This document shows positions 7,423 through 63,247 of a stretch of DNA of 64,000 bases, piece after piece. The DNA lies in IMG/VR virus record IMGVR_UViG_3300042516_005475, positions 124,001 to 188,000 of that record. One strand, given 5' to 3'. The notes beneath the pieces are model-generated. The model was not told the origin of the DNA. It saw only the letters and a list, made by a program, of their open reading frames with translations, and did no database searches. Both the position numbers and the translations under genes were made by a program. Every line of letters starts with the position of its first letter. The stretch's first letter is position 1.

Positions 7423-7800
7423 TTAGAATCTAGCCATCATTGTACCTAATCTTGGTTTAACAACAGCAACTACTGGTGTTGGAGGGGCCATTTGACCCAT
7501 TTCTTGATGTTTTCCAGCTTCATATTCAAGATAATGAGTAATAGTAGAGATATAGTCTTCTGCAAGAGTTATTTTAGACTGAACCCATGGTTCGAGTTCA
7601 TCAAAGTTAGCTACTAAACTCTTTAATCTCTCAGTATTAGTAGATAAGCTATGTAGCTGAGAGTTAATCATATTTTCAGCCTCTGCCTGGTAATCATCAT
7701 TTTGAGGTTGAGCAACAGGCCCTGGAGGCATTTGAGCCGGTCCGGTTGAAATACCTGTCATACCAACACCACATTCTTTAACAAGCTTATCAAAGTTCAT
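7423..7800 (-). CDS. Hypothetical virion-type protein (LEPWVQSKITLAEDYI motif)
   Basis: Start moved to ATG 7800 (MNFDKLVKE); ATAAATA 12 nt upstream. Confidence 0.6.
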   Translation of the reverse strand: MNFDKLVKECGVGMTGISTGPAQMPPGPVAQPQNDDYQAEAENMINSQLHSLSTNTERLKSLVANFDELEPWVQSKITLAEDYISTITHYLEYEAGKHQEMGQMAPPTPVVAVVKPRLGTMMARF

Positions 7801-7834
7801 ACTATTATTTATTATCGATAGAATAAATAATTGC

Positions 7835-9226
7835 ATGATCAAGTTTGATAACTTTTACTGTTTAATAGAAGGTGGTAATTTGAGTATTGATAACAAGTAT
7901 TTTGCAGATGAAATTAAGCTTCAATTTCTTAATCAAAAGAGCGCTACTAAGTTTGTTAATGATTTTGAGAATCTTTTAAGAGATATTAACAAAATTTACA
8001 AATCTGTATACAATGAGCCTCTCTGGGCACAGCTTGAAACATTGTTAAAGACAAATAAAATCTACGCTGGTTCTGCTAAAATATTCTTTGAATATGTAAA
8101 ACAAGGCAAGTTTGATCTATTTCGCGAGTATAAAAAGACTGTTGGAGATATTGACGTTCAATTTGGCGAAGATTGTGCAGCTAAATTGCGTGATCTTTTC
8201 TATGGGGATAAAGAAACAAACTTAAGTAACGAAACAGCTCCAAAGAGAATTGGTGAGTTCACTTTTATTGGTGAAGGTGGTACAGGAGCTATTCAAATGA
8301 ATACTTTATTTTCCTACAACTTTGGTGTTGATATGAAAACAGGTACTGAGAAAGAAAATGCTCCTACATATATTCAAATTGATTTTGAGCCTGTTGAATT
8401 CGAAAGAGGTTTACCAACTAGATTCAGCCAATTTGCTCATAGCGCTGACTTTAACGATATTCAAAACTCTATCAAAGGAGTGTTTCATAAGTTTTTGTTG
8501 CAAAGTCTTTTAGATGTTTCAAATGAGATTGTTGCTGATATTAAGCTTTATACCTCCAAAGGAAAAACTTCCACAAGAAAAGGAACCAAGCTTACAGTTT
8601 ATTCATTCTCAGTCGATAGAGGTTTTAGAGATAGGTACGTTCCTGGCTTGACTAAACCAGAGGGAGATGTTATACTCAAGAACAACGCTGGTAAGCAGGT
8701 ATATTTCGACATTTCTAAACCAGAAGAAAGAAACGAACTTAAACGCACCGGTTTTGTTACAATAGATCAAAAATCAGATTTATTTAAAGATCTAATAGGA
8801 ACTAATGAGTTAGATAACAATACTCAAATACCTATTAACGTTGAATCGTTAAAATACAGACAAGATTTAGATATTCTGTTTAGATTAATTTTCGGTGTTG
8901 ATCCTGATGATACAGATAGAGAAGGTTTTAATTCTTATACTGGTCTTTTGAATCTAATGTCTAAGTACAAAAACAACCTTAGCAACAAAAACAAAGATTT
9001 TCCATCAATGGTTTATAAGAACTTTGTTGAAAAGATTTATGGTTCAGCAGCTCAATTGCTTTACAAGAGAGACGTAAAGAACCCTAAACCTCAAATCATG
9101 ATAAAAGATTTCGAAACCAAACAATCACCTGTTAATCTTTACCAACAAATTTTTCCTGAAGTTACAAGCGCTTTCACAAAAGATCAGTTTGATAACTTAA
9201 TTAACTCCTACTATACTTCTCACTAA
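7835..9226 (+). CDS. Pol-beta-superfamily nucleotidyltransferase-like protein
   Basis: YAGSA...VGDIDVQ (GS...DxD) motif and distal FIQIDFE. Confidence 0.6.
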   Translation: MIKFDNFYCLIEGGNLSIDNKYFADEIKLQFLNQKSATKFVNDFENLLRDINKIYKSVYNEPLWAQLETLLKTNKIYAGSAKIFFEYVKQGKFDLFREYKKTVGDIDVQFGEDCAAKLRDLFYGDKETNLSNETAPKRIGEFTFIGEGGTGAIQMNTLFSYNFGVDMKTGTEKENAPTYIQIDFEPVEFERGLPTRFSQFAHSADFNDIQNSIKGVFHKFLLQSLLDVSNEIVADIKLYTSKGKTSTRKGTKLTVYSFSVDRGFRDRYVPGLTKPEGDVILKNNAGKQVYFDISKPEERNELKRTGFVTIDQKSDLFKDLIGTNELDNNTQIPINVESLKYRQDLDILFRLIFGVDPDDTDREGFNSYTGLLNLMSKYKNNLSNKNKDFPSMVYKNFVEKIYGSAAQLLYKRDVKNPKPQIMIKDFETKQSPVNLYQQIFPEVTSAFTKDQFDNLINSYYTSH

Positions 9227-9227
9227 C

Positions 9228-10211
9228 ATGAAACCGTTTTCAAAATTTATTAAAGAAACAATAGCTTCTACTACTAGAAAGAGCATCCCTCATCTTGGTG
9301 GAGATACATCTAACATTGTTGACGAGCATGTATTTTTAGACTTGCTTAACTTTATTGAGCAAAACTACAACAGTGTTATTACCCCTCAGAAGATTAACAT
9401 CACTGAGAAGTTTGATGGTTTTGGAATTAGGTTCGGTCTTGATCAAGACAAGAAATTCTTCATCGAATCTTCTAGATCCGGGCCAGTGTTTGATGCTGGT
9501 ACCTTTCGTAATTTTGCTATTAAGAAGTTTGGTTCTTCTAACCCAATCGCTGAAGGGTATGAAGACATCTTTATTACTTTGCAACAAAACCAAAAGCTAC
9601 AGAACGTCTTAAGAAAGTATTGGGAACCTTCTGGTATTAAAGTTGTTGCTGAGGCTCTTTATTTGCCTAATAAGAAAGAAGAAGGAGATGATTATGTTAT
9701 TTTTATTGCTACAAGATACAAAAAGGCAAAGTTAGGTTCTTGGGCTACATTTATTCTCTTTAATGCAACTGATGGTAATAATAAAGAGATGGAAGAAAAT
9801 AAGAAGCAGTCTTTGTTTGAGGGGTTGAAGGCTTGTTCTACTGCTGATATTAAATTTGAAACGCCTGATATTGAAGATGTTTCCGATATTGACGTTTCAA
9901 AAGAAATACAACAGGTCAAGAAGTTCATTGGTAATATTGAAAATCAATACAAGGTTAAAATCAACGACATTTTAGGTTCCAAATCAAGAAAGAAGTCTGA
10001 TATGGAAATTAAGAATGCTGTAAAGTCTAAGATTATTGAGTTTCAGAAAGTACTTGCAAATAAAATCGCCAGCAGTATAATCAAGGGAAAGCTTGGTGAC
10101 ATTGAGGGGGTCGTTTTTAAACTTGCAAATGGTCTAATGTTTAAAGTTGTGTCAGATGCCTTTAAGGAAGCTAAGAAACAGAGCAACCTTAATTATGGAA
10201 TTAAACAGTAA
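9228..10211 (+). CDS. ATP-dependent ligase-like (covalent nucleotidyltransferase fold) protein
   Basis: Motif I ITEKFDG, motif III VVAEALY, motif IV IEGVVFK, motif V FKVV. Confidence 0.6.
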   Translation: MKPFSKFIKETIASTTRKSIPHLGGDTSNIVDEHVFLDLLNFIEQNYNSVITPQKINITEKFDGFGIRFGLDQDKKFFIESSRSGPVFDAGTFRNFAIKKFGSSNPIAEGYEDIFITLQQNQKLQNVLRKYWEPSGIKVVAEALYLPNKKEEGDDYVIFIATRYKKAKLGSWATFILFNATDGNNKEMEENKKQSLFEGLKACSTADIKFETPDIEDVSDIDVSKEIQQVKKFIGNIENQYKVKINDILGSKSRKKSDMEIKNAVKSKIIEFQKVLANKIASSIIKGKLGDIEGVVFKLANGLMFKVVSDAFKEAKKQSNLNYGIKQ

Positions 10212-10761
10212 TAAACTTTTTGTAATTTCAGATACTCATTTTTGCCACAATAACATTATCAAGTACTGCAACCGACCTTTCGAAAATGCAGACCTCATGA
10301 ACGAAGTCCTTATTGACAATTGGAACAAAACTGTCAATAAGGACGATGTTATTTTACACTTAGGAGATATTACTGCTGGAGCAGGTCAGCAAAAAGATCA
10401 AAGAACTAAAGAAATTCTGGCTAGATTAAACGGTAAGAAACTTTTTATTCGTGGCAATCACGATTCAGGCATTAAATGTGTTCAGATGCTTGATGCTGTT
10501 ACTTTTAGCTGGTGTGGCATAAGAATTCACTGCACACATATTCCTGACTACAGATTCCAACCTTTTGGAGATTTTCACTTGCATGGACACATACATCAGA
10601 ATACAATAAAACTAGAGGGTAGCTTCAACTGCTCAGTTGAGAATATTAACTATACCCCAATTAGACTATCAGAAATTATAGAAAGGCATTATGACAGTAA
10701 AATTAACTCCAGAGGAAGTGACGCAGTGCGAGACCTTTGCGAAGCAGGTTGCGGAAGCTAA
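10195..10761 (+). CDS. Calcineurin-like metallophosphoesterase
   Basis: ISDTHF, HLGD, RGNHD, HGHIH motifs; start moved to ATG 10195. Confidence 0.9.
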   Translation: MELNSNKLFVISDTHFCHNNIIKYCNRPFENADLMNEVLIDNWNKTVNKDDVILHLGDITAGAGQQKDQRTKEILARLNGKKLFIRGNHDSGIKCVQMLDAVTFSWCGIRIHCTHIPDYRFQPFGDFHLHGHIHQNTIKLEGSFNCSVENINYTPIRLSEIIERHYDSKINSRGSDAVRDLCEAGCGS

Positions 10762-12017: not shown

Positions 12018-12230
12018 ATGAAAACTATACATGGTTTAAGAGAGCAACTAGCAAAAGCTGCAAGCATTTCTGAAATAGATTCACTCTTACAGAAGTGTGA
12101 GATTTACAAGGAAGCTACAATAGATACAAAGAGGCGTTGGATTAATACTGCTCGTAAGAGAGCTAACGAGCTAGAAGCTAGCAATATTGTTACTGAAAAG
12201 CCTAAAAAGGCTAAGAAGAGCAATAAATAA
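12018..12230 (+). CDS. Small hypothetical protein
   Basis: ORF track. Confidence 0.5.
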   Translation: MKTIHGLREQLAKAASISEIDSLLQKCEIYKEATIDTKRRWINTARKRANELEASNIVTEKPKKAKKSNK

Positions 12231-12234
12231 TTGT

Positions 12235-12816
12235 ATGAACAGCAATATTAACAATAGTATCTTTGAAGCCTATGTTAAGTCAAAGACTCCAATTGTAGAA
12301 AATAAACAAGATAGTCAACAAGTAATCGAAGAAGCTAAGAGCAAGAAACCTGATGCAGATAAAGACGGTGTGCCTGATTGGGCAGATAAGCACCCTGGAA
12401 AGGACGATCACGCTGGAAAGAAGAAGGGTGGAAAGAAAGGAATGAGCGCAAAGCAGGCTAAGTTTTTCGGTAAGAAGAAAAAGAAAGCAGTAAAAGAAAA
12501 CGTTAATTTAAATGCTGATCAGAAAGTACTAAAAGAAAACTTCAGAGCAATTCTACAAAAGAACGGTTTATCAGATCTAGTTACACCAAAGATTATTAAA
12601 GCAATGCTAGAGGCCTTTGCGTTAGGTAAATCAGTAAATGAGTCAAGTGATGAAAAAGCTAAGCTAAAAGCAGAACATGATGAAATAAAGAAGAACCTAG
12701 CAAGCATGAGCGATGAAAATAGAGGACATGATTATAAAAACCGTTTAGCTAAAAGACTAAAAGAAATAAAAGATAAATTAAAAAACACAGTAGGTTATAC
12801 AAACAAAGGAGAATAA
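12235..12816 (+). CDS. Lys-rich hypothetical virion protein
   Basis: Start moved to ATG 12235 (ATAAATA at 12223); PDADKDGVPDWAD EF-hand-like loop; repeated xxE sites. Confidence 0.55.
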   Translation: MNSNINNSIFEAYVKSKTPIVENKQDSQQVIEEAKSKKPDADKDGVPDWADKHPGKDDHAGKKKGGKKGMSAKQAKFFGKKKKKAVKENVNLNADQKVLKENFRAILQKNGLSDLVTPKIIKAMLEAFALGKSVNESSDEKAKLKAEHDEIKKNLASMSDENRGHDYKNRLAKRLKEIKDKLKNTVGYTNKGE

Positions 12817-18815: not shown

Positions 18816-18842
18816 TATAAATAATAGTAAGTTCTTTGATAT

Positions 18843-19222
18843 GGGCCTGTACTGGTTTCGATTTAACAAACTAATATAGTGTTGCACGTAGATGTTGATC
18901 GGTTGGCATCTTAAAAAGCTGATCAAAAGTTAAACGCTGAATATAGCTATGACTACGAGGCTAAGGCTGACTCTTTTGAGTACGACTTCGCTTCTGAATC
19001 CGCTGTAGCCTAAGGGCTGCACCAGACCTACTCTAAACTTGTAAGGTAGAGTCTGCTATACAAGTATCTAGTTACTATGGTAGTAAGTAGCTGGATTATT
19101 GCTACCGAAAATCTGAGTTAGGTTGTTGCTTAGTAACCTCAGATTATACAAAGCAAATAAGCGTGTAGAAGCATTATAGTATTGGGTTAAAGACGCAGGT
19201 TCAACTCCTGCCAGGTCCACCA
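18843..19222 (+). ncRNA. ssrA: tmRNA
   Basis: 5' GGGCCTG pairs with 3' CAGGTCC-A-CCA including G3:U70; GGTTTCGA D-like loop; T arm GCAGG-TTCAACT-CCTGC; tag ORF 18936..19013 AEYSYDYEAKADSFEYDFASESAVA*. Confidence 0.93.
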
Positions 19223-19495: not shown

Positions 19496-19570
19496 GGGCT
19501 GTTAGTGATAGTGGTAGCACGGGAGCTTTGCAAGCTTTAGGGAAGAGTTCGATTCTCTTACGGTCCACCA
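19496..19570 (+). tRNA. tRNA-Ala(TGC)
   Basis: G3:U70, loop TTTGCAA, CCA. Confidence 0.9.
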
Positions 19571-19583
19571 TAAATATTGTGAT

Positions 19584-19657
19584 GCGGGTATAGCTTAATG
19601 GTAAAGTGCCAGTCTTCCAAACTGGCTATGCGGGTTCGATTCCCGCTACCCGCTCCA
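19584..19657 (+). tRNA. tRNA-Gly(TCC)
   Basis: GCGGGTA/TACCCGC acceptor, loop CTTCCAA, U73, CCA. Confidence 0.93.
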
Positions 19658-20992: not shown

Positions 20993-21033
20993 ATGTCTTG
21001 AGAATCTACTTTGAAGCCTATATAATAATATTT

Positions 21034-21240
21034 ATGGCACGCGTAAGCAAAGATGATTTTTACACTAAGAAATCTCACGACAATGAAGAGTCTTTTAAAT
21101 TACATGTAGAATGGCTTACTGGTGGCCGAAACGGTGGAACTTGTCACAGACCTGATATTGTTACTAGAGGTCCCTGTACTCCTTGCGAGTATGTAAAGTT
21201 TTGCTTGTGTCATAGTAAGAACTTAACTAAGAAGAAATGA
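21034..21240 (+). CDS. Small Cys-rich hypothetical protein
   Basis: Start moved to ATG 21034; CxxCxxxxxC near the C-terminus. Confidence 0.5.
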   Translation: MARVSKDDFYTKKSHDNEESFKLHVEWLTGGRNGGTCHRPDIVTRGPCTPCEYVKFCLCHSKNLTKKK

Positions 21241-25224: not shown

Positions 25225-25815
25225 TTAGATAAAATTAGAGAAGTAGTCTTTAAAATATTTAGGTAAATTTCTGATATCTTCTTTGTTCTTTTCCAAGTTT
25301 GAGGCTATTTTATCAAATGTAGATTCATCTCCCATTCTATAAACATCTCCTAAAAATGCATACTCTTTGCCGTAAGTTTGTACAAAGTAGTTATTTACCT
25401 CTATTAAACTAGCCATTACTGCCTGTAAATCTTTTTCAGGGAATATCTTAGGTACTGCTTTACCATTTAAATAGAACACATTATATCTACCAGCCAAGTA
25501 GGCTGGGTGATTTTTATAGATTTCTCTTTGATTTCTAAATCTCTTTAATGTCTTTTCAGGTATTTCATATTTGAAGCTCTTTGGAAGAGCTTCTGCTGTT
25601 CTAGTAATAATGTAAAACAGATTTAAAAAACCGCTATCGTTTTTAGAAGGATTACCTAAGAAATATTGTATACTTGCATAATTGGAACTATTGCTTCTGG
25701 CTATATTAGCTTTGATGCTTTTATCATAATTAGCAGCGGTAAGAGGTTTTCCAAAATTACCTGCTACGAGCTTTAAAGCTCCTTCATATATTAGACATAG
25801 ATCCTGGAATCTCAT
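25225..25815 (-). CDS. Hypothetical protein, CTS-like N-terminus
   Basis: Start moved to ATG 25815 (MRFQDLCLIYE). Confidence 0.6.
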   Translation of the reverse strand: MRFQDLCLIYEGALKLVAGNFGKPLTAANYDKSIKANIARSNSSNYASIQYFLGNPSKNDSGFLNLFYIITRTAEALPKSFKYEIPEKTLKRFRNQREIYKNHPAYLAGRYNVFYLNGKAVPKIFPEKDLQAVMASLIEVNNYFVQTYGKEYAFLGDVYRMGDESTFDKIASNLEKNKEDIRNLPKYFKDYFSNFI

Positions 25816-25828
25816 AAATATATTTATG
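25813..25828. promoter_or_regulatory. Palindromic bidirectional late promoter
   Basis: Perfect 16-bp palindrome CATAAATATATTTATG containing both divergent ATGs and ATAAATA on each strand. Confidence 0.75.
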
Positions 25829-26485: not shown

Positions 26486-26708
26486 TTACGTTTTTAGAGC
26501 AGTTCTTGCTGAGTACCAATATCTCATCAAGAGTTTCCTTGACTCTGATGCCAGTATTATTAGTCCAGCGAGTATTAATAACACTGTGCTTGCCGCTAGG
26601 ACTAGGCTCAATACTAACGATAGTATCAAGATTAAAAAGAACAGGTGTATAGTTTCTAGAGTTATCATGCGAGAGGTCTAACTGATTGAGCTTTACAAAA
26701 TGAGCCAT
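26475..26708 (-). CDS. Small hypothetical protein (flagellar FlbD-like beta pattern)
   Basis: FVKL...VLFNLDTIVSIE...VKETLDEI. Confidence 0.5.
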   Translation of the reverse strand: MAHFVKLNQLDLSHDNSRNYTPVLFNLDTIVSIEPSPSGKHSVINTRWTNNTGIRVKETLDEILVLSKNCSKNVING

Positions 26709-26743
26709 ATGGTTATTATATTGTTTATCTCATAAATATCCAT

Positions 26744-28520: not shown

Positions 28521-28547
28521 AATATCAAGCCTAGAATAAATAACTAT

Positions 28548-30846: not shown

Positions 30847-30901
30847 AAATAAGTTGCTTTCTGCGATAAATAGTTTATATTTAGTATGTTCTTTGAATGA
30901 T

Positions 30902-37490: not shown

Positions 37491-37501
37491 ATAATAACAA
37501 T

Positions 37502-39905: not shown

Positions 39906-39913
39906 ATAGTTAT

Positions 39914-40580: not shown

Positions 40581-40634
40581 ACTTTTTTATTTATTCCTGT
40601 TGCATTTAGTTTATTTAGAGAATATCATATTCAT

Positions 40635-43712: not shown

Positions 43713-43930
43713 ATAACTTTATGAATCAAAACATTATTAGAGAGAACAATGATTTCTCAGTAGATTATAAGGATACCTGTGTAGCCTGTAATGGTCCTTC
43801 AGAGGAGAACAAGAGTACCAATGTTACTTTACGCAAATTTTATGTAGAAGGTTCTGGGCAATTGTGTAGGAAGTGTTATTTTAATGTTTTTCCAGAGAAA
43901 CCCTATTCAAATTATTCGAATCTTGGATAA
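43703..43930 (+). CDS. Small zinc-finger protein
   Basis: CVAC...YVEGSGQLCRKC. Confidence 0.6.
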   Translation: MGLNNFMNQNIIRENNDFSVDYKDTCVACNGPSEENKSTNVTLRKFYVEGSGQLCRKCYFNVFPEKPYSNYSNLG

Positions 43931-43938
43931 ATACCTAT

Positions 43939-46035
43939 GTGAAGTTTCAAGATTATCTCATTGAGTCCTGGAAAGATTATAAAGTAAGTAACAGCCCCAA
44001 AGTACTTTTGTACGACTTTTACTTGCTTAGTTATCTTTCCTCTCTTATTTTAGATCCAGGTACCAGAAAAGATGTTGGTTTAACAGGTGTTGGTTATTCT
44101 GGTAAATTCTTTGGAAGAGAAGGTAAAGAGCTCGATGAAGATATTCAAAACGCACAGAGAAAGCTATTACCATTCTTAGGTAACAAGCTATCTCAGGCTT
44201 TATTTTTAGCCGTTTGCGCAGAGCTACGCCATGTATTAGATAGAAATCAACAATGGAGTGAGTTTAAGCATACAAAGAACAAAACATTTAGAAACTATAT
44301 AAGAAACTTAGAGTTCATGAATAATAAAGAACTCAAAGATTTCCAATCTAAAAGAAACATAGAAAATCCAAGATTACAGGTTCAAAGCCAAGGTTATAAA
44401 ACATCTTACCAGGCTGCAAAGAAGTCTATCAAAGAAACAGGTGGCAATGTAATTGACTTTGCCAGAATGGCTGCAGACGCCTTTGAAGATTTAAACTGGT
44501 CAGCATCATACGGAGGAGATAAGTGGGCTGAAATTGCTAAAGGTTATGTAGATTTGCGCCTGGCTCTCAACAATTATAATCCTGAGGCTCCCAGCCCTTC
44601 TTCTGAGTCAGCAGAAAGGTTAATTGCTGCTATTGATCATGCATTTGATTTAGAGCACAATACTGGTACAGTATTAAACAAAGTAAAGTACTTTGATGTT
44701 AAGGGATATGATTGGATTAAGACTGCCTTGGATGATAAGAGAGATGCTAACATGTATGACATAGCCAAGAAGGCTAGTAGCGACATGAGAAAGCTAGGTC
44801 AAGAAGTGTTAAAGGTGGCTGGTATGCAGGATAAGCAGATGAAAAAAGTACCTGCAGAGGCTGGTATTCCAACAAAGAAAATAAAGCTGGCTGGGTTTAC
44901 CTCGAAGAAATATGAAGGTGAACATATTAAAGATCTCAGCAGTCTTCCTATAGGTAGTCTCATAACAGATGATTATAGCGAGTATGTAGCTAAAGTTTTA
45001 AATATAAAAAATGCAGAGAAAAAGGTTACGGTTAAATTTATAGCTATAAAAAATAAAAATGATGAAAAATGGTTAGGAAAAACTCATAGATATAGTTTTA
45101 ACTATATTAAAGAAAAATTACACATAGTTAAAAAACAAGATGAGGCTAATCTCTTAAAAGATTACTTTGTAGATCCTAGTTATAAACCGGAAGTTACTAG
45201 CACTTCATCTGCCATAAAAATTGGTGACACAGTAAAAGTTAAGAATAATAACATGGAGGGTACTGTAGAATTAATTAATAATGAGGGAGATAATGAAGCA
45301 CCCTTAGTTCAAATTAAAGTAATTAAAGCTATTCACCCTGAGCTTGTAGGTATTAAAACCTGGTACCCAGCAGACCATCTTGAGAAGATATCTCCATCAA
45401 AGGTAGTTAAGCTACAAGGTTTTGGTAGTAAAAAGCCAGCAAAAAATGAGGCATTATTATTTTCAACAGAAATTGAAAGCCCATATATGTTAACTATAGG
45501 TTCAATTCTAATTAATATCCATAGTTCTGATCTATATATTGTTCAAATGGTTAATGGGCCTGGAAATTATATAAAGATAAAATTAGTTGCATCGAACGAC
45601 GCTTTGGAGTTTCCTAATTATACTGAACCTGAATTATACAATGGTGCTACAATTGCGAGAGATTTTAGATTAATAAAAAACAAAGATAAGGAAAGAGCCT
45701 TTGCTTCATATGAGTTTATAAAATTATCTTCTGCGAGTAGAGAAGCATCTAAGGCTGCCAAGGCAGATGAGCCAGCCCCTAGAGAAAGAGATGAAAATTT
45801 AAAAGTTGGTTTTTACTTTGTAATTAATAATGAAACAAACATTGTTCAAATAACAGCTCTTCCAAGAGGTTATGTTGAATATAAAATAGTAGCAGCTACT
45901 AAAAAATATAAAGAGTTGGAAGGTGTTTCTAGCGGTATGCCTAAAGATATGTTCATAGATTCAATTGACTTTGCTATTAATCCTAAATCAACTGAATTTA
46001 ATTACTATATTAGACAATTCAAAAATAAACGTTGA
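43939..46035 (+). CDS. Large putative head-packaged protein; N-domain paralogous to 50814..54314
   Basis: MKFQDYLIE; LYDFYLLS, SYGGDKWAEIAKGY, AIDHAFDLEHNTG. Confidence 0.65.
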   Translation: MKFQDYLIESWKDYKVSNSPKVLLYDFYLLSYLSSLILDPGTRKDVGLTGVGYSGKFFGREGKELDEDIQNAQRKLLPFLGNKLSQALFLAVCAELRHVLDRNQQWSEFKHTKNKTFRNYIRNLEFMNNKELKDFQSKRNIENPRLQVQSQGYKTSYQAAKKSIKETGGNVIDFARMAADAFEDLNWSASYGGDKWAEIAKGYVDLRLALNNYNPEAPSPSSESAERLIAAIDHAFDLEHNTGTVLNKVKYFDVKGYDWIKTALDDKRDANMYDIAKKASSDMRKLGQEVLKVAGMQDKQMKKVPAEAGIPTKKIKLAGFTSKKYEGEHIKDLSSLPIGSLITDDYSEYVAKVLNIKNAEKKVTVKFIAIKNKNDEKWLGKTHRYSFNYIKEKLHIVKKQDEANLLKDYFVDPSYKPEVTSTSSAIKIGDTVKVKNNNMEGTVELINNEGDNEAPLVQIKVIKAIHPELVGIKTWYPADHLEKISPSKVVKLQGFGSKKPAKNEALLFSTEIESPYMLTIGSILINIHSSDLYIVQMVNGPGNYIKIKLVASNDALEFPNYTEPELYNGATIARDFRLIKNKDKERAFASYEFIKLSSASREASKAAKADEPAPRERDENLKVGFYFVINNETNIVQITALPRGYVEYKIVAATKKYKELEGVSSGMPKDMFIDSIDFAINPKSTEFNYYIRQFKNKR

Positions 46036-46065
46036 TTCTGCATAGAACCCCGTTATAATACAGAA

Positions 46066-46458
46066 ATGAGCTATTATCTCTTTTTGGACGATGAACGCTT
46101 CCCTCAAGATGTCACTTGGGTGAAGCTCCCACCCCACAACTGGACCATTGTTCGCAACTATGCTGACTTTGTGCGAACCATTGAGAACAAAGGTTTGCCT
46201 GTGGAAATTGCCTTTGATCATGACTTGGGACACGAGCATTATCAGGCCTATCATGCCGCTGCTAAGCCTGGACATGGAGTCATTGATTACAGCAGCTTCA
46301 AGGAGAAGACTGGTCTCGACTGCGCCAAGTGGCTCATTGAACATTGTAACGAGAAGAATTTGCCGTTCCCCAAGTATTATGTTCACTCCATGAACCCCAT
46401 TGGCAAGCAGAATATCATCAACGCTGTCAATTCCTTCAAAAGATATTTGCAAAAGTAG
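46066..46458 (+). CDS. Cyclic-phosphate-processing receiver (cREC) domain protein
   Basis: LFLDDERFP, VRNY, IAFDHDLG, TGLDCAKWL, VHSMNPIG; TTGATT-16-TATAAT promoter at 46032..46059. Confidence 0.8.
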   Translation: MSYYLFLDDERFPQDVTWVKLPPHNWTIVRNYADFVRTIENKGLPVEIAFDHDLGHEHYQAYHAAAKPGHGVIDYSSFKEKTGLDCAKWLIEHCNEKNLPFPKYYVHSMNPIGKQNIINAVNSFKRYLQK

Positions 46459-48311: not shown

Positions 48312-48333
48312 CTAAAAGGGCATAAATATCTTT

Positions 48334-49731
48334 ATGCCTGTTAACAGTAATGTAACAACTCCTAATTACCAAACTTTAGAGTATCAAAAGTTTGTCCAAA
48401 TATATAATGATACTAGATTCCCTCCAATAACAAGTGTAAGATCTGACTATTATAGCGGTACACAGATTGAGATATATGATAAGTATGCTGTATTAACTTT
48501 TGATATTGGGCAAAATGCAGCTCTAGGACCAGCTAATACGTTGCCGTTTGGAGATAATGCTGCTAGTGATGCCTTTGGTAGACTGAGAGTTTCTCTCCCA
48601 TCTACCTTATTTAACTCTAAACAAAATAATGATAGTAATTCTTTACTCTATAGCACAGCAACTGTAAATACAGGTAGTTGGTATTTTGATAACAATAATG
48701 CCTGTACAGTCTTATCTGTTTCAGCAACAGGAGATGTTGCTATAAAGCAGTCAAAAAAGTATATGAATTATCAGCCTGGCAAATCCCAGCTGATATTCGA
48801 AACCTTTGTAATGCCTAACACAGCAGGCATAGTTAACAGAGTTGGTTTATTTGATAGCTCAACAACTTCTCCATATAGCAATAATATTGAGGGTTATTAT
48901 TTTCAATGTAATAATGGAGTAAATTCTTTCCATATTGCTAATGTTGGTGACGAGCCAAGCCAAAGCGCTTTACAATCTGAATGGAACATAGACAAGCTTA
49001 ACGGTACAGGTTTATCTGGTATAACATTAGATGTTACAAAAACCCAGATTTTAGTAATAGATTACGAGTGGTTAGGGGTAGGGAGAGTTAGAATGGGGTT
49101 CTGTATTAATGGTATTATATTTTATTGTCATCAATTCGTTCATGCAAATGAAGTCTCTCTTCCTTATCTCCAAGATCCAAACAAACCTATTAGATATGAA
49201 ATTAGAAGCACAGGTGGAATAGGTTCATTAAAACAAATATGCGCTAGTGTTATGAGTGAAGGTGGAAGTGTTGATAACGCTATCCCGTTATCTATTGATA
49301 CTGGGTTTGACAGTATTGGTAATATTTCAAGCAATACATTATGGCCAGCTATAACTGTTAGACTAAAAGATTCTTTTAAGAGTGTAGATATACAATTAAA
49401 AGACTTTGCTGCAATGGCTTTCTCAACTACTAATACTCTTGTAAGAGTAGTATCAAATGGTGTTATTTCTAATTCAGCAGCCTTTGTTGATATGAGCTCT
49501 GGGGCCTTGGAATATAGTATAGGCACTACTTCTACTACTCTTACTGGAGGTGTTATATTATTCAGCTCTTTTTTTAATAAGGCCAGCAATACTATTAGTC
49601 AATTAGGAGAGTCTTTATATAGTTTAGGTAGCAACATAAACGGCACCAAAGATACATTATCATTAGTATTAGTTCCATGTGGAGGAAATGAAAAGTATTT
49701 TGCTGCAATGAACTTCAAACAGTACCTATAA
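48334..49731 (+). CDS. Probable virion structural beta-rich protein
   Basis: SDAFGRLRVS, YQPGKSQL, DYEWLGVGRVRMG; Ser/Thr/Asn-rich; ATAAATA 12 nt upstream. Confidence 0.6.
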   Translation: MPVNSNVTTPNYQTLEYQKFVQIYNDTRFPPITSVRSDYYSGTQIEIYDKYAVLTFDIGQNAALGPANTLPFGDNAASDAFGRLRVSLPSTLFNSKQNNDSNSLLYSTATVNTGSWYFDNNNACTVLSVSATGDVAIKQSKKYMNYQPGKSQLIFETFVMPNTAGIVNRVGLFDSSTTSPYSNNIEGYYFQCNNGVNSFHIANVGDEPSQSALQSEWNIDKLNGTGLSGITLDVTKTQILVIDYEWLGVGRVRMGFCINGIIFYCHQFVHANEVSLPYLQDPNKPIRYEIRSTGGIGSLKQICASVMSEGGSVDNAIPLSIDTGFDSIGNISSNTLWPAITVRLKDSFKSVDIQLKDFAAMAFSTTNTLVRVVSNGVISNSAAFVDMSSGALEYSIGTTSTTLTGGVILFSSFFNKASNTISQLGESLYSLGSNINGTKDTLSLVLVPCGGNEKYFAAMNFKQYL

Positions 49732-50793: not shown

Positions 50794-50813
50794 GGAGAGT
50801 TAATAAATATTCA

Positions 50814-53800
50814 GTGATGACACTGAGCAATTTCTTAACCGAGGCAGCAGTAAATTACAAGATTGGTAGTGGTAACCCAGAGAAGATGCTCTATGACTTT
50901 TATGTCTTGAGCTTCATCTCTACCATTAACTTAACACCTGAGAAGGCCAAGACTGGAACCTTTGGAGATCTTGGATTCCAGGGTGGGTTTCTCGGTAAAT
51001 CTGATAGAGTCAAGGAGGACATTGAGTACGCTCAAGATGTCCTCCTTCCTGTGTTAAAAGAGAAGCTAGTAAAAGGTTTGTTTGTATCTATCTGTGCTGA
51101 AATCAGACACATAAAAGATAGACCACAAAGCTATAAAGACACACCATTAGCAACATCCAAGGTATTCAGAGACTACTATCGCAATTATACTTTAATAGAT
51201 AAAAGTTTACCAAAAGAGTTTGAGATAAAGAGATTAAGAGAGCCTAAAAGCGCTATTCCAAAGTCTGAAGCTTACAAGAGATCCTATCAGGCGGCAACAA
51301 AGGCTATTAAAGACACAAATTCTACTCCATATGAGTTTGTTCAGATGTGTGAATATGCCTTTAAGAACATGTCATGGGCTGCTAGTTACGGTGGTAAGAA
51401 CTGGGCTGCTATTTGCGCTGGGTACAGATTGTTAGTAGATTCTAAGTCAAAGGATCAGGTATCTGTAGCTATTGACCATGCATATGACCTTGAGCATAAC
51501 ACAGGTGCGGCTCTTAACAAGGTAAAGGATTTCTACATTACTGATAAAAATGGTAGAGAAGACTTTGATTGGATGGGCAAAGCATTGGATCTCAAGCGCG
51601 ACGCTAAGTCCATGAACAAGCTCATTGACAAGTGTAGCGGTGATATGAAGAGATTAGCCTTGCAGGCTATGGCCTTATCTCCAATTGACTACATGAAGAA
51701 GAAGACTCCAGCTCCAGAGACTGTGATGCAGCAAACAGCATCTAAAGTAGGTGGAGAGTACTTAAATGCCTTTAATGAAGGAGCACCTAAGAAGTATAGA
51801 ACAAAAGAAACTAAAAAGGAAGAGAAGGCTGATTTAAGTGAAGTAAAGGTAGTTCCAGGCCCTAAGCATGGATTAACAGCAGTAACCAAATATCAAGAAG
51901 ATAATGTTTATTATGATGAGTATTTAAAAACCTATGTGTATGTTGTTAAGAAAGTGCCAGAAACAAAATCTGGAATAATTGTAAAATTAGCTGCTATAAC
52001 AAAAGAAACCCCTAAAGAGATTTTAAAGAAGCAAATTGATCTACACAACAAAGGAAATAATACTTATGTTAGTATCGACATGAACTTATTAAATTTAAGT
52101 CCAACAGATTTAGCTAACTTTTTTAATGAGGAAATACCAGTAACATCAAACGTAACAAAATTTAAATTAGCTCCTGCGCCTAAAGACTCTTCACATGCTC
52201 CTTACATTTTTCAAAAAAACAAATATTATTATGATAGTTTTTTAAATGTTTATGTAGAGTTTATTAAACCAGACCCTGATTCTAAACTTGGAATAATTGT
52301 TTCTTTAGTAGCAGTTACTCCAAATTCTGCTATTTCTCTACTTCAAAATAAAATTAAGGCCTATAATAAAGAACATGCTTATTTGAATACCTATGTCGCT
52401 GCGGAAAACGACCTTATGGGAGTTAGCCCAAAGGATGAAGAATCCTTAAAAGCTGCTGTATCTGGTAAGACTCCAATTAAATCACCAGAAGATCAATACG
52501 AAAGAGAGGAAAAGCAGTCAAAAGAGTATATTAGCAAGCTAGTACCTAATGCTCCTATGCCTATCACTGGTAGTAAGGTTAATAAGTTTAGTGATGATAA
52601 AATTTATTATGACAGCAAGACAAAGGCTTATGTAAAATATAAACATAAGAGTGGCTGGACAGATCCTAAAATAATGGAATTGTATGCAACAACATATTTT
52701 TCGGATACAGCTTTATTAAAAAGAAAAATTGAACTGTTTAAAAAGGAATTTGGTCAAAATAAACAATATGTAGCTGCAATAAAAGATATTATTGAGATTG
52801 ATGAATCTGATACAAACAAAGTAAAACAAGTAGTAGATGGAGAGAAGTCTGAGGTTAAGAAGCCTAATTTAGATGTATATTTCGCAAAGTATAAATTTGG
52901 TGATAAGGTCTTTTTAGATGTTAAAAAATCTGTATCTGGTCAAGTAATAGAGAACTTTTTTGAAGATAATGATGAGTATTACAAAATTAAAGTAATTGAT
53001 AATGCATCATATACTGGCGCTAGTTCTCCTTATGGAATAGGTAAAATCTTTACAAAAACTGCAAAGTATATAGATGACTTAAACCCAAAATACAAAGTAA
53101 CTGACAGAGTAATTTTAATACAATCCGGTAGTGAAGGTATTATTGTTCAGACCCCATTCAAGCAAGACGCTACATCTAATTATCTTATTAAGATTACAAA
53201 AGCAGGAGAGTCAAATGCCTTTAAAAAAGGAGAAGAAATTGTAGTTAATACCAGCCGTATCGCCCCTTTGAAGAGGGAGAATGCTAGCGCAAGAACTAAT
53301 GCTATTAAGAAGCAGAGTGCTCCAGGTAATATACCGTCAGAGGCCTGGGATAAAATGAGCGAAAAAGTAAAGAACATCTTTGCTCCATATAAGAAAAACA
53401 AAAACACTTCTTATGTTTATTATACTGAGAAAGGAGGCAGACAATTAGGTTTGTATGGTGTAATTGAAAAATTTTACTACAGTCAGGTTGGCGGTACAGA
53501 ATTACTTACAGTAGAATTTAGATATTTTGTTTCTGCTGCATCTCAAGCTTCTTTTACAACAATATCTGAGAATAATTTTAATAAACTACAAGATTACAAA
53601 TCTGCTTTAGAAAGTGTAAATGATTCACCTCTTTACAATGCTCCTTCTCAAAACTTAGATTCTGCATTAATGCTAAAAGACTATCAAACTGATATTAATG
53701 GAGAGGTATTTTATCATATACCAGCTCAGCAATATGTAAAGGTTAAGTCAAAAGGGGCTGGAATTCATACAGGTATATACTTTTCAGTTGTTCCAGTAGC

Positions 53801-54314: not shown

Positions 54315-54348
54315 TTGATTCTTAAAAATCATTGGTTATAATAATTAC

Positions 54349-54696
54349 ATGACTGTTGAACAATTAGCGAGAGATTATAAGCAGCTAATGGCTGTGACTA
54401 ATTCTCTCGCTTCTGCCTTGCAGAGCATTGATATCTTTCAGAAGTATAACGAAGAATCTACATTAGCTACTCGTAGAATCTGGAGCAATTATAACTGTTG
54501 GCTATACAAAGGTGAGGCTATTGCCAATGTTAATGCAGAACAGATAGAACTTTCAGTTGCAAAGTTTGAAGATTTAATGCATACTGTTAACAGCAACCAA
54601 GAGCTTAAAATGCTCTTGCAAGGCATTGAAATTGAAAAGATAAACGAACCTGATATTCAAGATGAAGCACCAAATAGATACGATGACATCTATTAA
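54349..54696 (+). CDS. Hypothetical protein
   Basis: ORF track; TTGATT..TATAAT upstream. Confidence 0.55.
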   Translation: MTVEQLARDYKQLMAVTNSLASALQSIDIFQKYNEESTLATRRIWSNYNCWLYKGEAIANVNAEQIELSVAKFEDLMHTVNSNQELKMLLQGIEIEKINEPDIQDEAPNRYDDIY

Positions 54697-57395: not shown

Positions 57396-57419
57396 ATTTT
57401 TTACATATAAATATCTAGT

Positions 57420-58007
57420 ATGATTGATGATGTTTTAACAAGAAGCTCTTATAAAAACATTTGCCTACAGCAAAGAGAAGAGGTTAAAAACGTGTTCCCT
57501 GTATTGTTAAATAACATACTACCAAATAGAATTATTGAAGTAGGTACTGGACATGGTGGTTTAACATTGTTCTTAAGGGATAATTTACCATCAACCTCAG
57601 ATGTTTATTCTTTTGATATTGTTGAAAGTGTTTATCATAAAGATTTAAGAGATAATAAAATTAATATTTTTAATGGAAATATTTTTGAAGAAAAAACAGA
57701 TTGGAATGAATTTATTTTAAAACAAGAATGGGAGCATTTATTTAACGTTAGCCCCAAAATTGTTATATGTGATGGAGGTTTCAAGCGAGGAGAGTTTAAT
57801 GGTTTAGCAAAATATTTAAATATTGGGGATATTATAATGCTGCATGATTATAGTACTGATAGAGAGTCTTTTGAAAAGTTAAACGTTTGGAATTGGTTAG
57901 AGTGTCAATATTCAGAAATTAAAAAAAGCTGTGAAACTTATAACCTAATACCTTACATGCACGAAGAATTTCTAAATGTAGCGTGGGGATGTTTTCAAAA
58001 AAAATAA
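57420..58007 (+). CDS. SAM-dependent methyltransferase (CmcI/Methyltransf_24-like)
   Basis: IIEVGTGHGG...YSFDI...ICDGG...GDIIMLHD. Confidence 0.75.
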   Translation: MIDDVLTRSSYKNICLQQREEVKNVFPVLLNNILPNRIIEVGTGHGGLTLFLRDNLPSTSDVYSFDIVESVYHKDLRDNKINIFNGNIFEEKTDWNEFILKQEWEHLFNVSPKIVICDGGFKRGEFNGLAKYLNIGDIIMLHDYSTDRESFEKLNVWNWLECQYSEIKKSCETYNLIPYMHEEFLNVAWGCFQKK

Positions 58008-61994: not shown

Positions 61995-62072
61995 AATAAT
62001 ACTGATACTTATATTAAGCCTATATTTTTCAAGCTAAGTTGATTATTTAAAATAAAGGACTATAATATTCCT

Positions 62073-62282
62073 ATGACCAAGGTAGAACATCAGGAGCTAA
62101 TTAACAAACTTGCCATGATTGGCTATCATGCTGATGGAGAGGATAAAGATGCAGTATTCTTAGCCATTGCTGCTTCTTATTCATTACCTTATGAAAAGTT
62201 AGATATATTAAAACAGCATGCAGAAGAGGTGGTCAACAATCAAACACTCTTGAATGTAGATCTAATTCTTGAAACCATCTAA
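62073..62282 (+). CDS. Small hypothetical protein
   Basis: ORF track; TTGATT-16-TATAAT upstream. Confidence 0.55.
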   Translation: MTKVEHQELINKLAMIGYHADGEDKDAVFLAIAASYSLPYEKLDILKQHAEEVVNNQTLLNVDLILETI

Positions 62283-62538: not shown

Positions 62539-62730
62539 ATGAACAAATTCGAATACTATTGTTGTTGGCTAGATGTTTTTAATGCTCAATCTCTGCAAGA
62601 GTTCCTCGATGAAAAGGGCTCTCAGGGATGGCAAATCGATAGAACTTTACCAAGTAAAGACCCTAACGATTATAAGACTCTGTTTATATTTAAAAAAGAA
62701 CTGCGGGAAATAATTGATGTAATTACATGA
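62539..62730 (+). CDS. DUF4177-like small protein
   Basis: FEY...LDEKGSQGWQI...FIFKK. Confidence 0.6.
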   Translation: MNKFEYYCCWLDVFNAQSLQEFLDEKGSQGWQIDRTLPSKDPNDYKTLFIFKKELREIIDVIT

Positions 62731-62912
62731 TTAAAGAAGATATTGAACAATTAAAGTCTTATAGAGCTATGCTATCTAAGATTAGTGAGGTAGTAGAAGA
62801 GTTCTGTGATACAGAAGAAAGTACTACTCTCGATTGTATTTTAGAGATGAAGGCTCAGCTTTTCGAGGCAAAGGCTCAGCTTCTCCGCAAAAGAAAAACG
62901 ATTCAATTCTGA
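62727..62912 (+). CDS. Small hypothetical protein
   Basis: ORF track. Confidence 0.5.
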   Translation: MIKEDIEQLKSYRAMLSKISEVVEEFCDTEESTTLDCILEMKAQLFEAKAQLLRKRKTIQF

Positions 62913-62920
62913 AGAAAGGC

Positions 62921-62972
62921 TTGCCGTTCCTGGCAGGAACCTGTATACTTTTTGTAGAAAAATTAATAAATA
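62921..62972 (+). promoter_or_regulatory. Tandem TTCCTG-box promoter and late ATAAATA element
   Basis: TTGCCG-TTCCTG..17..TATACT (62921-62949); ATAAATA 62966-62972; ATG 62978. Confidence 0.75.
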
Positions 62973-62977
62973 ATTGT

Positions 62978-63247
62978 ATGCCTTACAATAACGATTTCAA
63001 CCGTATTTCTAAGAGCTATACTTCTCTTAAGGAGAACGAGGCTGCAATGAAGATGCTGTTTGAGAATTTTGATATTACTGAAGAAGAATTTAAGAATGCT
63101 CCTCTTATCTCTACAATTGAAGAAATGAACACGCTGCTAGAAAAGCGAGGCGATATTTCTTGTAGTGTTTCTATTAACGAGAGCAATGGTAAAGATACAT
63201 CAGTTGTTACTTTGAAGTACTTGGCACAAGGAGAAGATATTGTATGA
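62978..63247 (+). CDS. Acidic hypothetical protein
   Basis: Start moved to ATG 62978. Confidence 0.55.
   Translation: MPYNNDFNRISKSYTSLKENEAAMKMLFENFDITEEEFKNAPLISTIEEMNTLLEKRGDISCSVSINESNGKDTSVVTLKYLAQGEDIV

What the first reader, a model, noticed from the sequence alone, without database searches (positions are those of the whole stretch)
7800..62978. Late-promoter element ATAAATA fixed 12 nt before start codons, suggesting a leaderless late regulon
Seen: motif start to start codon is exactly 12 nt for plus-strand starts 7835, 12235, 25826, 26744, 28548, 43939, 48334 and 62978, and for minus-strand starts 825, 6511, 7800, 25815 and 39905. It is 11-14 nt for 50814, 57420, 40580 and 32068. 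No Shine-Dalgarno fits in the gap. Known: T4 late promoters are a lone TATAAATA read by a gp55-type sigma, with initiation a few nt downstream. Inference: +1 falls on or next to the A of AUG, so late mRNAs are leaderless, which could bypass host SD-dependent initiation; the phage also encodes its own initiator tRNA.
Basis: partly seen in the sequence, partly recalled or inferred. Interest (0 to 1): 0.66.

Follow-up and report, generated by a model that had tools for sequence, protein, structure and literature searches.

The report
Late promoter fused to start codons
In this uncultured 230-kb T4-like phage, the T4-type late promoter box ATAAATA sits where transcription should begin on the first base of the start codon of about 40 genes, so these messages probably have no leader; this is a new variant of a known promoter, and it remains unproven without RNA 5'-end data.

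Summary
The whole 230,047-bp genome has 119 ATAAATA sites. In 37 of them an ATG or GTG that opens an ORF of at least 40 codons lies exactly 12 nt from the motif start, against about 0.7 per control offset. Another 19 lie at 13-16 nt. One-mismatch heptamers show almost no such peak.

In an 86%-identity relative, all 13 orthologous sites keep the heptamer at the same offset (0/91 changes), while flanks and spacers change at 21-25%.

The genome encodes a gp55-type late sigma and a gp45-type clamp. No gp33 was found. Motif genes include the major capsid, portal, gp15 and gp25 homologues. In T4 numbering, ATAAATA spans -12 to -6, so offset 12 is +1. Position -1 is a pyrimidine in 35/37 sites and +1 is A or G.

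Leaderless layout is therefore general here, not late-specific.

Shine-Dalgarno signals are absent from the whole genome, so "bypassing the host SD" is not supported.

T4 and cyanophage S-PM2 place the same box 19-35 nt upstream. No RNA run was listed, so the start sites remain inferred.

The parts
7823..7837 (+). ATAAATA (7823-7829), 5-nt spacer, then the ATG at 7835 of a 463-aa protein (phrog_19290). One half of a divergent promoter pair.
   Evidence: The heptamer and offset are kept in relative G002 although the flank differs completely.
7798..7812 (-). ATAAATA (7812-7806), 5 nt, then the ATG at 7800 of a 125-aa protein. The other half of the divergent pair; the intergenic gap is 34 nt.
12223..12237 (+). 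ATAAATA, 5 nt, ATG at 12235 (193 aa). The motif follows the upstream gene by 4 nt.
25813..25828 (.). A 16-nt perfect palindrome made of two back-to-back ATAAATA boxes, each 12 nt before a divergent ATG (minus-strand start 25815, plus-strand start 25826). Only 10 nt separate the two start codons.
   Evidence: read directly from the sequence
26732..26746 (+). ATAAATA, 5 nt, ATG at 26744 (430 aa)
28536..28550 (+). ATAAATA, 5 nt, ATG at 28548 (98 aa)
43927..43941 (+). ATAAATA, 5 nt, GTG at 43939 (698 aa, phrog_20946)
48322..48336 (+). ATAAATA, 5 nt, ATG at 48334, virion structural protein (phrog_1645, E 2.5e-79)
62966..62980 (+). ATAAATA, 5 nt, ATG at 62978 (89 aa)
823..837 (-). ATAAATA (837-831), 5 nt, ATG at 825 (121 aa)
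   Evidence: Kept in G002 although the protein N-terminus is only 50% identical.
6509..6523 (-). ATAAATA (6523-6517), 5 nt, ATG at 6511 (323 aa). The upstream neighbour is divergent.
39903..39917 (-). ATAAATA (39917-39911), 5 nt, ATG at 39905 (122 aa). The TAA inside the box is the stop codon of the upstream gene (gap 8 nt).
3571..3586 (-). ATAAATA (3586-3580), 6 nt, ATG at 3573 (80 aa).
50803..50819 (+). ATAAATA, then GTG at 50814 (11 nt) directly followed by an in-frame ATG at 50817 (14 nt); 1166-aa protein
57407..57422 (+). TATAAATA (57406-57413), 6 nt, ATG at 57420 (195 aa)
40578..40594 (-). ATAAATA (40594-40588), 7 nt, ATG at 40580; endonuclease (phrog_452)
32066..32082 (-). ATAAATA (32082-32076), 7 nt, ATG at 32068; HNH/homing endonuclease
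37486..37502 (+). TATAAATA whose predicted +1 (37499) lies 3 nt before the mature 5' end of tRNA-Thr (37502)
18816..18843 (+). TATAAATA 26 nt before the tmRNA gene that heads a cluster of tmRNA plus five tRNAs; a second ATAAATA lies at 18795
30866..30902 (+). ATAAATA 36 nt before tRNA-Ile, the first gene of a five-tRNA cluster
19570..19584 (+). ATAAATA 14 nt before tRNA-Gly, overlapping the 3' end of tRNA-Ala
6559..6574 (+). Second class: sigma70-type -10 box TATAAT with a TTGATT -35 box 17 bp upstream, then 7 nt, then the GTG at 6572 of an exonuclease homologue (matches the S-PM2 exonuclease)
21021..21036 (+). Second class: TTGAGA, 17 bp, TATAAT, 7 nt, ATG at 21034 (68 aa)
26706..26720 (-). 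Second class: TATAAT, 6 nt, ATG at 26708 (77 aa)
46054..46068 (+). Second class: TTGATT, 16 bp, TATAAT, 6 nt, ATG at 46066 (130 aa)
54337..54351 (+). Second class: TTGATT, 16 bp, TATAAT, 6 nt, ATG at 54349 (115 aa)
62061..62075 (+). Second class: TTGATT, 16 bp, TATAAT, 6 nt, ATG at 62073 (69 aa)

Best explanation
ATAAATA is the -10-like late promoter element of this uncultured T4-superfamily phage (230 kb, 36% GC). It is read by host RNA polymerase carrying the phage's gp55-type sigma, probably tethered to the phage's gp45-type clamp. In this lineage the box has been pulled right up to the coding sequence. The box occupies -12 to -6, an A/T-rich 5-nt spacer occupies -5 to -1 and ends in a pyrimidine, and the A (or G) of the start codon is +1. 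Late genes that head a transcription unit or carry their own internal promoter are therefore made as leaderless mRNAs, or with leaders of 1-4 nt at the 13-16-nt sites. Downstream genes are translated by coupling: 112 of 288 genes start within 10 nt of the upstream stop. Early and middle genes use the same layout with host sigma70 promoters (TTGAnn, 16-18 bp, TATAAT, 6-7 nt, ATG). The whole phage therefore runs without Shine-Dalgarno sequences, presumably because its unknown host does.

Shown: motif position, specificity, conservation, gene classes, and the presence of gp55 and gp45. Inferred: the position of +1, late timing, dependence on gp55, and translation from a 5'-terminal AUG.
For: 1. 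The spacing peak is sharp: 37 of 119 sites at offset 12 against about 0.7 background, and one-mismatch heptamers are nearly inert.
2. In relative G002 (86% identity for the query protein), 13 of 13 orthologous sites keep the box at the same offset. The heptamer shows 0/91 changes, the flank 48/227 and the spacer 18/72 (Fisher p = 4.5e-9). The portal gene of relatives with 77-97% identity also keeps ATAAATA-N5-ATG while the flanks differ.
3. The machinery is present: a gp55 homologue, a gp45 homologue and gp44.
4. The geometry fits. T4 gp55 flips A-12, A-9 and A-8 (PMC7892883), and the T4 late box lies at the -10 position with no -35 and an AT-rich segment downstream (PMC2988020). Here there is no conservation upstream of -13, the spacer is A/T-rich, position -1 is T or C in 35/37 sites, and +1 is A in 32 and G in 5.
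5. The gene classes fit. MCP, portal and tube-like proteins, gp15, gp25-like and a virion protein carry the box. UvsY, UvsX, QueC and an exonuclease carry TATAAT instead.
6. The box behaves as a promoter, not a translation signal. It sits 14-36 nt before tRNA and tmRNA genes. 20 of 53 motif genes have a divergent upstream neighbour, against 34 of 234 other genes. Only 1 of 33 motif genes overlaps the upstream gene, against 63 of 200.
7. Leaderless layout has independent support. 34 TATA[ACT]T boxes lie 6-7 nt before starts. 15 of them have TTGA at a 16-18-bp spacer, against 31 of 851 such boxes elsewhere (p = 4.6e-12). A TA-like signal about 10 bp upstream of the start is the published in-silico criterion for leaderless genes (PMC3160421).
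8. T4 and S-PM2 differ. Their ATAAATA boxes lie 19-35 nt before starts, with SD sequences in between.
Against: - There are no RNA data. No RNA run was listed, so +1, timing and gp55 dependence are untested.
- gp33 was not found (best E 0.04). The Pfam gp45 domains did not match.
- Only 4 of the 7 T4 gp55 pocket residues named in PMC7892883 are conserved in the pairwise alignment.
- 5 of the 37 starts are GTG, which is a poor 5'-terminal start codon in E. coli (own knowledge).
- 51 of the 119 boxes are not near a gene start.
- Gene calls come from my own simple caller, and for motif genes the start codon was chosen with knowledge of the motif. The motif-blind count is 24.
- The host is unknown.
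Confidence: 0.7

Rival explanations
1. ATAAATA is an SD-independent translation-initiation enhancer, an A/U-rich ribosome or S1 landing site at a fixed distance from the start codon, in a host that lacks SD usage. On this reading it is not a promoter.
For: No SD is present anywhere in the genome, and the region from -13 to -2 is A/T-rich for all genes. The element has a fixed distance to the start codon. 33 of 53 motif genes follow a same-strand gene, often by only 4-11 nt.
Against: - An A/U-rich enhancer should tolerate A/T substitutions. AAAAATA has 194 copies with 3 at offset 12, ATAAAAA has 165 with 1, and ATAAATT has 100 with 0.
- Only about 18% of genes carry the element, and they sort by function: structural genes carry it and replication genes do not.
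- It precedes untranslated tRNA and tmRNA genes.
- It is enriched at divergent gene pairs, where a promoter is needed.
- The same position is occupied in other genes by a full sigma70 promoter with a -35 box.
- A gp55 homologue whose T4 counterpart reads this very sequence is encoded in the genome.
Confidence: 0.1
2. The box is a gp55-type late promoter, but initiation is not on the start codon. Either RNA polymerase starts a few nucleotides away, or the real start codons lie further downstream, so the mRNAs have short conventional leaders.
For: 19 further sites lie at 13-16 nt, and the sheath and terminase genes have the box at 17 and 22 nt. This shows the system tolerates short leaders. The position of +1 is borrowed from T4.
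Against: - The sharp maximum at exactly 12 nt (37 sites against 7, 4, 2 and 6 at the next offsets) implies selection on the precise coincidence.
- The Y at -1 and R at +1 signature lies exactly on the start codon.
- Portal start codons align at residue 1 across relatives down to 52% identity.
- 31 of 33 ATGs at offset 12 open an ORF of at least 50 codons.
Confidence: 0.15
3. The pattern is a by-product of compact gene packing and composition. The TAA inside ATAAATA serves as the stop codon of the upstream gene, and AT-rich intergenic sequence does the rest.
For: In seven same-strand cases the gap is 8 nt, so the TAA inside the box is the upstream stop. In three more the gap is 11 nt. The overall count of the heptamer is close to Markov expectation (119 observed, 92-124 expected).
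Against: - 20 motif genes have no same-strand upstream gene at all.
- Shuffled upstream windows give 0.28 sites against 24 observed.
- The heptamer is invariant between relatives while neighbouring bases change at 21-25%.
Confidence: 0.03

Closest known systems
Bacteriophage T4 late transcription (TATAAATA box, gp55 sigma, gp33 co-activator, gp45 sliding clamp)
   Same: Same core heptamer. No -35 element. AT-rich segment downstream of the box. Homologues of gp55, gp45 and gp44 are encoded. The box precedes capsid, portal, tail and baseplate genes and homing-endonuclease genes.
   Different: T4 places the box 19-35 nt before the start codon with an SD in between; 69% of its long ORFs have an SD-like word, against 7.5% here. 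Here the box abuts the start codon. Position -13 is mostly A (21/37) rather than T. gp33 was not detected.
T4-like cyanophages (Kyanoviridae), late promoter NATAAATA (S-PM2, Syn9)
   Same: The degenerate first base, NATAAATA, matches this phage (PMC2984593). These are the nearest cultured relatives by protein similarity.
   Different: Portal identity is only about 33%. S-PM2 boxes lie 21-35 nt upstream of starts. Counts of ATAAATA-N5-ATG are 2 in S-PM2, 1 in Syn9 and 4 in S-SRM01, against 33 here. This phage has no psbA.
Leaderless genes of bacteria (Actinobacteria, Deinococcus-Thermus), recognised in silico by a TA-like -10 signal about 10 bp upstream of the start codon
   Same: The same diagnostic signature: a -10 element placed so that +1 falls on the start codon, with no SD (PMC3160421). 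Here it is seen for sigma70-type promoters and for the late box.
   Different: Here the signature lies in a phage and is attached to a phage-specific sigma as well as to the host sigma. Host lineage is unknown; no WhiB gene was found.
Single leaderless phage mRNAs such as lambda cI from PRM, and poxvirus late promoters with the TAAATG initiator (own knowledge, not tested here)
   Same: A promoter or initiator element overlaps or abuts the start codon, so the message begins at or next to the AUG.
   Different: Lambda has one such gene, not a regulon. Poxviruses use a viral multisubunit polymerase and add 5' poly(A) heads. There is no evolutionary relation to gp55 systems.
Marine sister lineage G001 (IMG/VR UViG 3300007512_001664, 200.8 kb, terminal repeats)
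   Same: Portal 55% identical. ATAAATA peaks at 12 nt (11 sites) and 13 nt (7 sites) before starts. TATAAT peaks at 12-13 nt. SD-like words precede only 10% of long ORFs.
   Different: The spacing is looser (12-16 nt), there are fewer exact 12-nt sites, and GC is 33.7%.

Membership tests
T4-type late transcription system | gp55-family late sigma factor encoded by the phage | tested here: met
   Genome 28656-29162 (+): phrog_234 'late sigma transcription factor', E 5.5e-27. BLASTP against T4 gp55: 36% identity over 115 aa, E 4e-13. phmmer against S-PM2 gp55: E 7.8e-18. Gene order UvsW-gp55-gp47-gp46 as in S-PM2.
T4-type late transcription system | (T/N)ATAAATA box without a -35 element, followed by an AT-rich segment | tested here: met
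   Profile of the 37 sites: invariant heptamer, no information upstream of -13, spacer mostly A/T. Only 5 of 37 have a TTGA at -35 distance.
T4-type late transcription system | The box sits at -12 to -6 relative to a mapped transcription start | not testable with these tools
   No RNA run was listed for this genome. The position of +1 is inferred from T4 numbering (PMC7892883).
T4-type late transcription system | gp45 sliding clamp and gp44/62 clamp loader | tested here: met
   gp45: genome 44401-45138, phrog_223 E 2.7e-8 and phmmer against S-PM2 gp45 E 1.9e-7. The Pfam gp45 domains PF09116 and PF02916 gave no match. gp44: genome 70866-71786, E 5.9e-53.
T4-type late transcription system | gp33 co-activator | tested here: inconclusive
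   Best phmmer match to S-PM2 gp33 has E 0.04 (window 11796-11993), and that ORF has no PHROG match. gp33 is short and fast-evolving, so absence is not shown.
T4-type late transcription system | Drives virion-structure genes late in infection | tested here: inconclusive
   The gene class fits: MCP, portal, gp15, gp25-like and a virion protein carry the box, while replication genes carry TATAAT. Timing itself cannot be tested.
Leaderless mRNA | The transcript 5' end coincides with the start codon | not testable with these tools
   No RNA data.
Leaderless mRNA | A -10-type element about 10 bp upstream of the start codon, with no SD (criterion of PMC3160421) | tested here: met
   37 late boxes at offset 12. 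34 TATA[ACT]T boxes 6-7 nt before starts, 15 of them with a proper -35. No SD enrichment.
Leaderless mRNA | Initiating purine at +1 preceded by a pyrimidine; AUG preferred as 5'-terminal codon | tested here: met
   Position -1 is T in 25 and C in 10 of 37 sites. Position +1 is A in 32 and G in 5.
Kyanoviridae (T4-like cyanophages) | Close similarity of core genes and cyanobacterial auxiliary genes such as psbA | tested here: not met
   Portal identity 33% at best. No Photo_RC (psbA) match. This is a separate, uncultured branch of the T4 superfamily.

The most novel reading that the evidence does not exclude
A whole uncultured branch of the T4 superfamily has abandoned 5' leaders and Shine-Dalgarno sequences altogether. 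The branch includes this freshwater-type 230-kb genome, its close relatives, and a marine sister clade. Host-sigma70 early promoters, gp55 late promoters and even some tRNA promoters are fused to the 5' ends of their products. First genes would then be translated from a 5'-terminal AUG and the rest by coupling. This would imply an abundant aquatic host whose ribosomes initiate mainly on leaderless mRNA, and possibly late transcription without gp33.
Probability: 0.45. Interest if true: 0.7.

Novelty: new variant of a known kind. Interest (0 to 1): 0.58.

Why it matters
T4 late transcription is a textbook system, and its promoter has always been described with a leader and an SD downstream. A lineage in which the same box is locked onto the start codon gives three things:

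- A natural set of about 40 promoters whose start site can be predicted to the nucleotide.
- A case where a phage sigma factor and leaderless translation are coupled across a whole regulon.
- A marker, promoter-to-start-codon fusion with no SD, that says something about the translation style of an unknown and probably abundant aquatic host.

It also matters for annotation. Gene finders that expect an SD will misplace starts in such genomes, and the ATAAATA-N5-ATG rule pins them. The library search found no paper that links T4-like phages with leaderless late genes; the only co-occurrences were citations of a gene finder.

Tried and rejected
- RNA evidence: the look-up of sequencing runs with 10 kb of the structural module listed no RNA run.
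- Near-identical records: megablast of 8 kb of the window against the phage collection found nothing.
- Host search: the portal gave no match in genome contigs. There is no WhiB and no psbA. The host stays unknown.
- gp45 by T4 protein and by Pfam gave nothing. It was found only through S-PM2 gp45 and PHROGs.
- gp33 was not found.
- Relatives of two window proteins (48334-49731 and 26744-28036) were not found in viral contigs. A third query gave the useful relative G002.
- PHROG scans left most motif genes of the window without a function.
- TAG recoding, prompted by a possible CUA tRNA: TAG ends 22 of 288 genes and no same-frame neighbours are separated by a TAG, so table 11 was kept throughout.
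- A Bacteroidetes-type host was considered because SD is absent. It was set aside because the early promoters are the ordinary TTGA/TATAAT type.
The same count was redone by reference.
- Literature on Thermus phage leaderless late genes could not be retrieved and is not used as evidence.

Full report
**What the window is.** The 64-kb window is positions 124001-188000 of a 230,047-bp IMG/VR virus record (CheckV completeness 100%, 36% GC). It carries 22 tRNA genes and a tmRNA. The major capsid gene runs in frame across the contig ends, so the record is a circular permutation of a whole genome. PHROG scans and comparison with T4 and cyanophage S-PM2 show a T4-superfamily myovirus. Homologues found are portal gp20, prohead protease gp21, MCP gp23, gp15, sheath gp18, tube gp19, gp25-like, TerL, gp32, UvsX, UvsY, UvsW, gp43, gp44, gp46 and gp47. 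The nearest cultured phages are T4-like cyanophages, at only about 33% portal identity, and there is no psbA. It therefore belongs to an uncultured branch.

**The observation.** I added one site, the minus-strand start 3573 at 13 nt. The 50814 GTG at 11 nt is followed directly by an in-frame ATG at 14 nt.

Genome-wide there are 119 ATAAATA sites. ATG lies at offset 12 in 33 of them, and 31 of these open an ORF of at least 50 codons. Control offsets give 0-3. With GTG included, the counts are 37 at offset 12, then 7, 4, 2 and 6 at offsets 13-16.

None of the 21 one-mismatch heptamers gives more than 4 sites at offset 12, although several are more frequent than ATAAATA. With start codons chosen from coding potential alone, 24 of 288 genes have the box exactly at -12. 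Shuffled upstream windows give 0.28. The most enriched 5-mers in the 20 nt before starts are TAAAT, AAATA, AATAA and ATAAA, and no SD word appears among them. 62 of the 119 boxes lie in the 10% of the genome that is intergenic.

**Conservation.** A 64.7-kb relative, G002, matches the window's 7835 protein at 86% identity and covers genome 86-146 kb. All 13 orthologous motif sites keep the heptamer at the same offset. The heptamer shows 0 changes in 91 positions, the upstream flank 48 in 227, and the spacer 18 in 72 (p = 4.5e-9). Six of these sites are in the window: 825, 3573, 6511, 7800, 7835 and 12235. Before the portal gene, relatives with 77-97% protein identity keep ATAAATA-N5-ATG while the flanks differ.

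A marine sister genome, G001 (portal 55% identical, 200.8 kb), also shows peaks at 12 and 13 nt. T4, S-PM2, Syn9 and S-SRM01 do not. They have 1-4 ATAAATA-N5-ATG matches each, against 33 here, and their boxes lie 19-35 nt before starts.

**Why it is a promoter.** The genome encodes a gp55-family sigma (phrog_234, E 5.5e-27; 36% identical to T4 gp55). It sits in the same gene neighbourhood as in S-PM2. The genome also encodes a gp45-type clamp and gp44. gp33 was not found.

The site profile has the properties described for T4 late promoters (PMC2988020). There is nothing conserved at -35, the heptamer is invariant, and the segment downstream is A/T-rich. As in cyanophages, which use NATAAATA (PMC2984593), the base before the heptamer is not fixed.

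The box precedes MCP, portal, gp15, gp25-like, a tube-like protein, a virion protein and three homing endonucleases. It is absent from the 22-kb replication and recombination block. It also stands 14-36 nt before untranslated genes: the tmRNA cluster, the tRNA-Ile cluster, tRNA-Thr and tRNA-Gly.

Motif genes are enriched among genes that must have their own promoter. 20 of 53 have a divergent upstream neighbour, against 34 of 234 other genes. They almost never overlap the upstream gene: 1 of 33, against 63 of 200. Two divergent pairs leave no room for anything else. Starts 7800 and 7835 are 34 nt apart. Starts 25815 and 25826 are 10 nt apart and lie inside a perfect 16-nt palindrome made of two boxes.

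**Why leaderless.** In the cryo-EM structure of the T4 gp55 open complex, the flipped adenines are at -12, -9 and -8 (PMC7892883). This places ATAAATA at -12 to -6, so the base 12 nt from the first A is +1. At that position the 37 sites have A (32) or G (5), preceded by T (25) or C (10). This is the usual pyrimidine(-1)/purine(+1) start preference of bacterial RNA polymerase (own knowledge).

34 TATA[ACT]T boxes lie 6-7 nt before start codons. 15 of them have a TTGA -35 box at a 16-18-bp spacer, against 31 of 851 such hexamers elsewhere (p = 4.6e-12). These are ordinary sigma70 promoters, for which the start 7±1 nt after the -10 box is well established (own knowledge). They serve UvsY, UvsX, QueC, an exonuclease and many small genes.

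Of the 54 genes with a divergent upstream neighbour, at least 33 have a late box or a -10-type box abutting the start codon. A TA-like signal about 10 bp before the start is the published criterion for leaderless genes (PMC3160421).

**What is not supported.** SD-like words precede 7.5% of long ORFs here, 10% in G001, 69% in T4 and 32% in S-PM2. The lack of an SD is therefore a property of the whole phage, including genes read by host sigma70. It is not a device of the late regulon for evading the host. 112 of 288 genes begin within 10 nt of the upstream stop, which suggests coupling for internal genes.

The host is unknown. The 'own initiator tRNA' remark is plausible for the tRNA-CAT at 31310-31382, which has a 1:72 mismatch, but it is not established.

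**Limits.** No RNA run was listed, so +1, timing and gp55 dependence are inferred. Gene calls are from my own codon-usage caller. For motif genes the start codon was chosen knowing the motif, and a motif-blind figure is given for comparison. Only four of the seven T4 gp55 pocket residues are conserved. 51 boxes lie away from gene starts.

**Comparison and novelty.** The element belongs to the T4 late-promoter kind. The met features are gp55, the box, the absence of a -35 element, gp45 and structural target genes. gp33 is inconclusive and the start site is untestable. What differs is the architecture: the box is fused to the start codon across a regulon of about 40-55 genes, in a genome with no SD and with early promoters fused in the same way.

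Leaderless genes and single leaderless phage mRNAs are known. I found no paper in the library that joins T4-like phages and leaderless late genes. I rate it a new variant of a known kind, with interest 0.58.

Noticed in passing
genome-wide; in the window e.g. 6559-6574, 21021-21036, 46054-46068, 54337-54351, 62061-62075: Canonical sigma70 promoters (TTGAnn, 16-18 bp, TATAAT or TATACT) end 6-7 nt before the start codons of early and replication genes. There are 34 such sites, 15 of them with a clear -35 box. The leaderless layout is therefore not limited to late genes.
   Followed up: yes
window 25813-25828: A perfect 16-nt palindrome made of two overlapping late boxes that serve divergent genes. 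Their start codons are 10 nt apart, and each box overlaps the first two bases of the other gene's start codon.
   Followed up: partly
window 46602-46920: tRNA-Lys(UUU) appears to be interrupted in the anticodon loop by a group I intron of about 244 nt (ARAGORN in intron mode; Rfam RF00028 at 46624-46859, 70.9 bits).
   Followed up: partly
window 47217-47359: A tRNA-like gene with a 56-nt insertion, read by ARAGORN as anticodon CUA (amber-suppressor type); the Rfam tRNA hit scores 36.4 bits. TAG still ends 22 of 288 genes and no read-through pairs were seen, so no recoding is claimed.
   Followed up: partly
window 18843-19222: Phage-encoded one-piece tmRNA (RF00023, 113 bits) with an unusual 25-residue tag ending in SAVA instead of the usual ALAA. 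It is preceded by two late boxes.
   Followed up: no
genome 229466-230047 joined to 1-1089 (minus strand): The major capsid gene (gp23 homologue, 563 codons) runs in frame across the contig ends, so the 'linear' record is a complete circular permutation. Its start at genome 1089 also has ATAAATA-N5-ATG.
   Followed up: yes
window 32068, window 40580 and genome 108870: Three HNH or homing-endonuclease genes carry the late box at 12-14 nt. This recalls the late expression of T4 intron endonucleases (own knowledge).
   Followed up: no
genome 52979-55741: The large terminase is 920 aa, far longer than T4 gp17. Its PHROG matches fall on two separate stretches and include a primase-like hit, which suggests an insertion such as an intein or a fused domain.
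   Followed up: no
genome 94381-104982: A 3533-aa ORF in the tail/baseplate module carries the late box at 13 nt. The box is conserved in relative G002.
   Followed up: no
window 37486-37502 and 19570-19584: Late boxes are placed so that the predicted +1 is only 2-3 nt before the mature 5' ends of tRNA-Thr and tRNA-Gly. The pre-tRNAs would therefore have almost no 5' leader.
   Followed up: partly
window 31310-31382 and 40842-40917: There are two tRNA-CAT genes. The first has a T:T mismatch at 1:72, as bacterial initiators have a mismatch there. The second has a fully paired acceptor stem and an encoded CCA end.
   Followed up: partly
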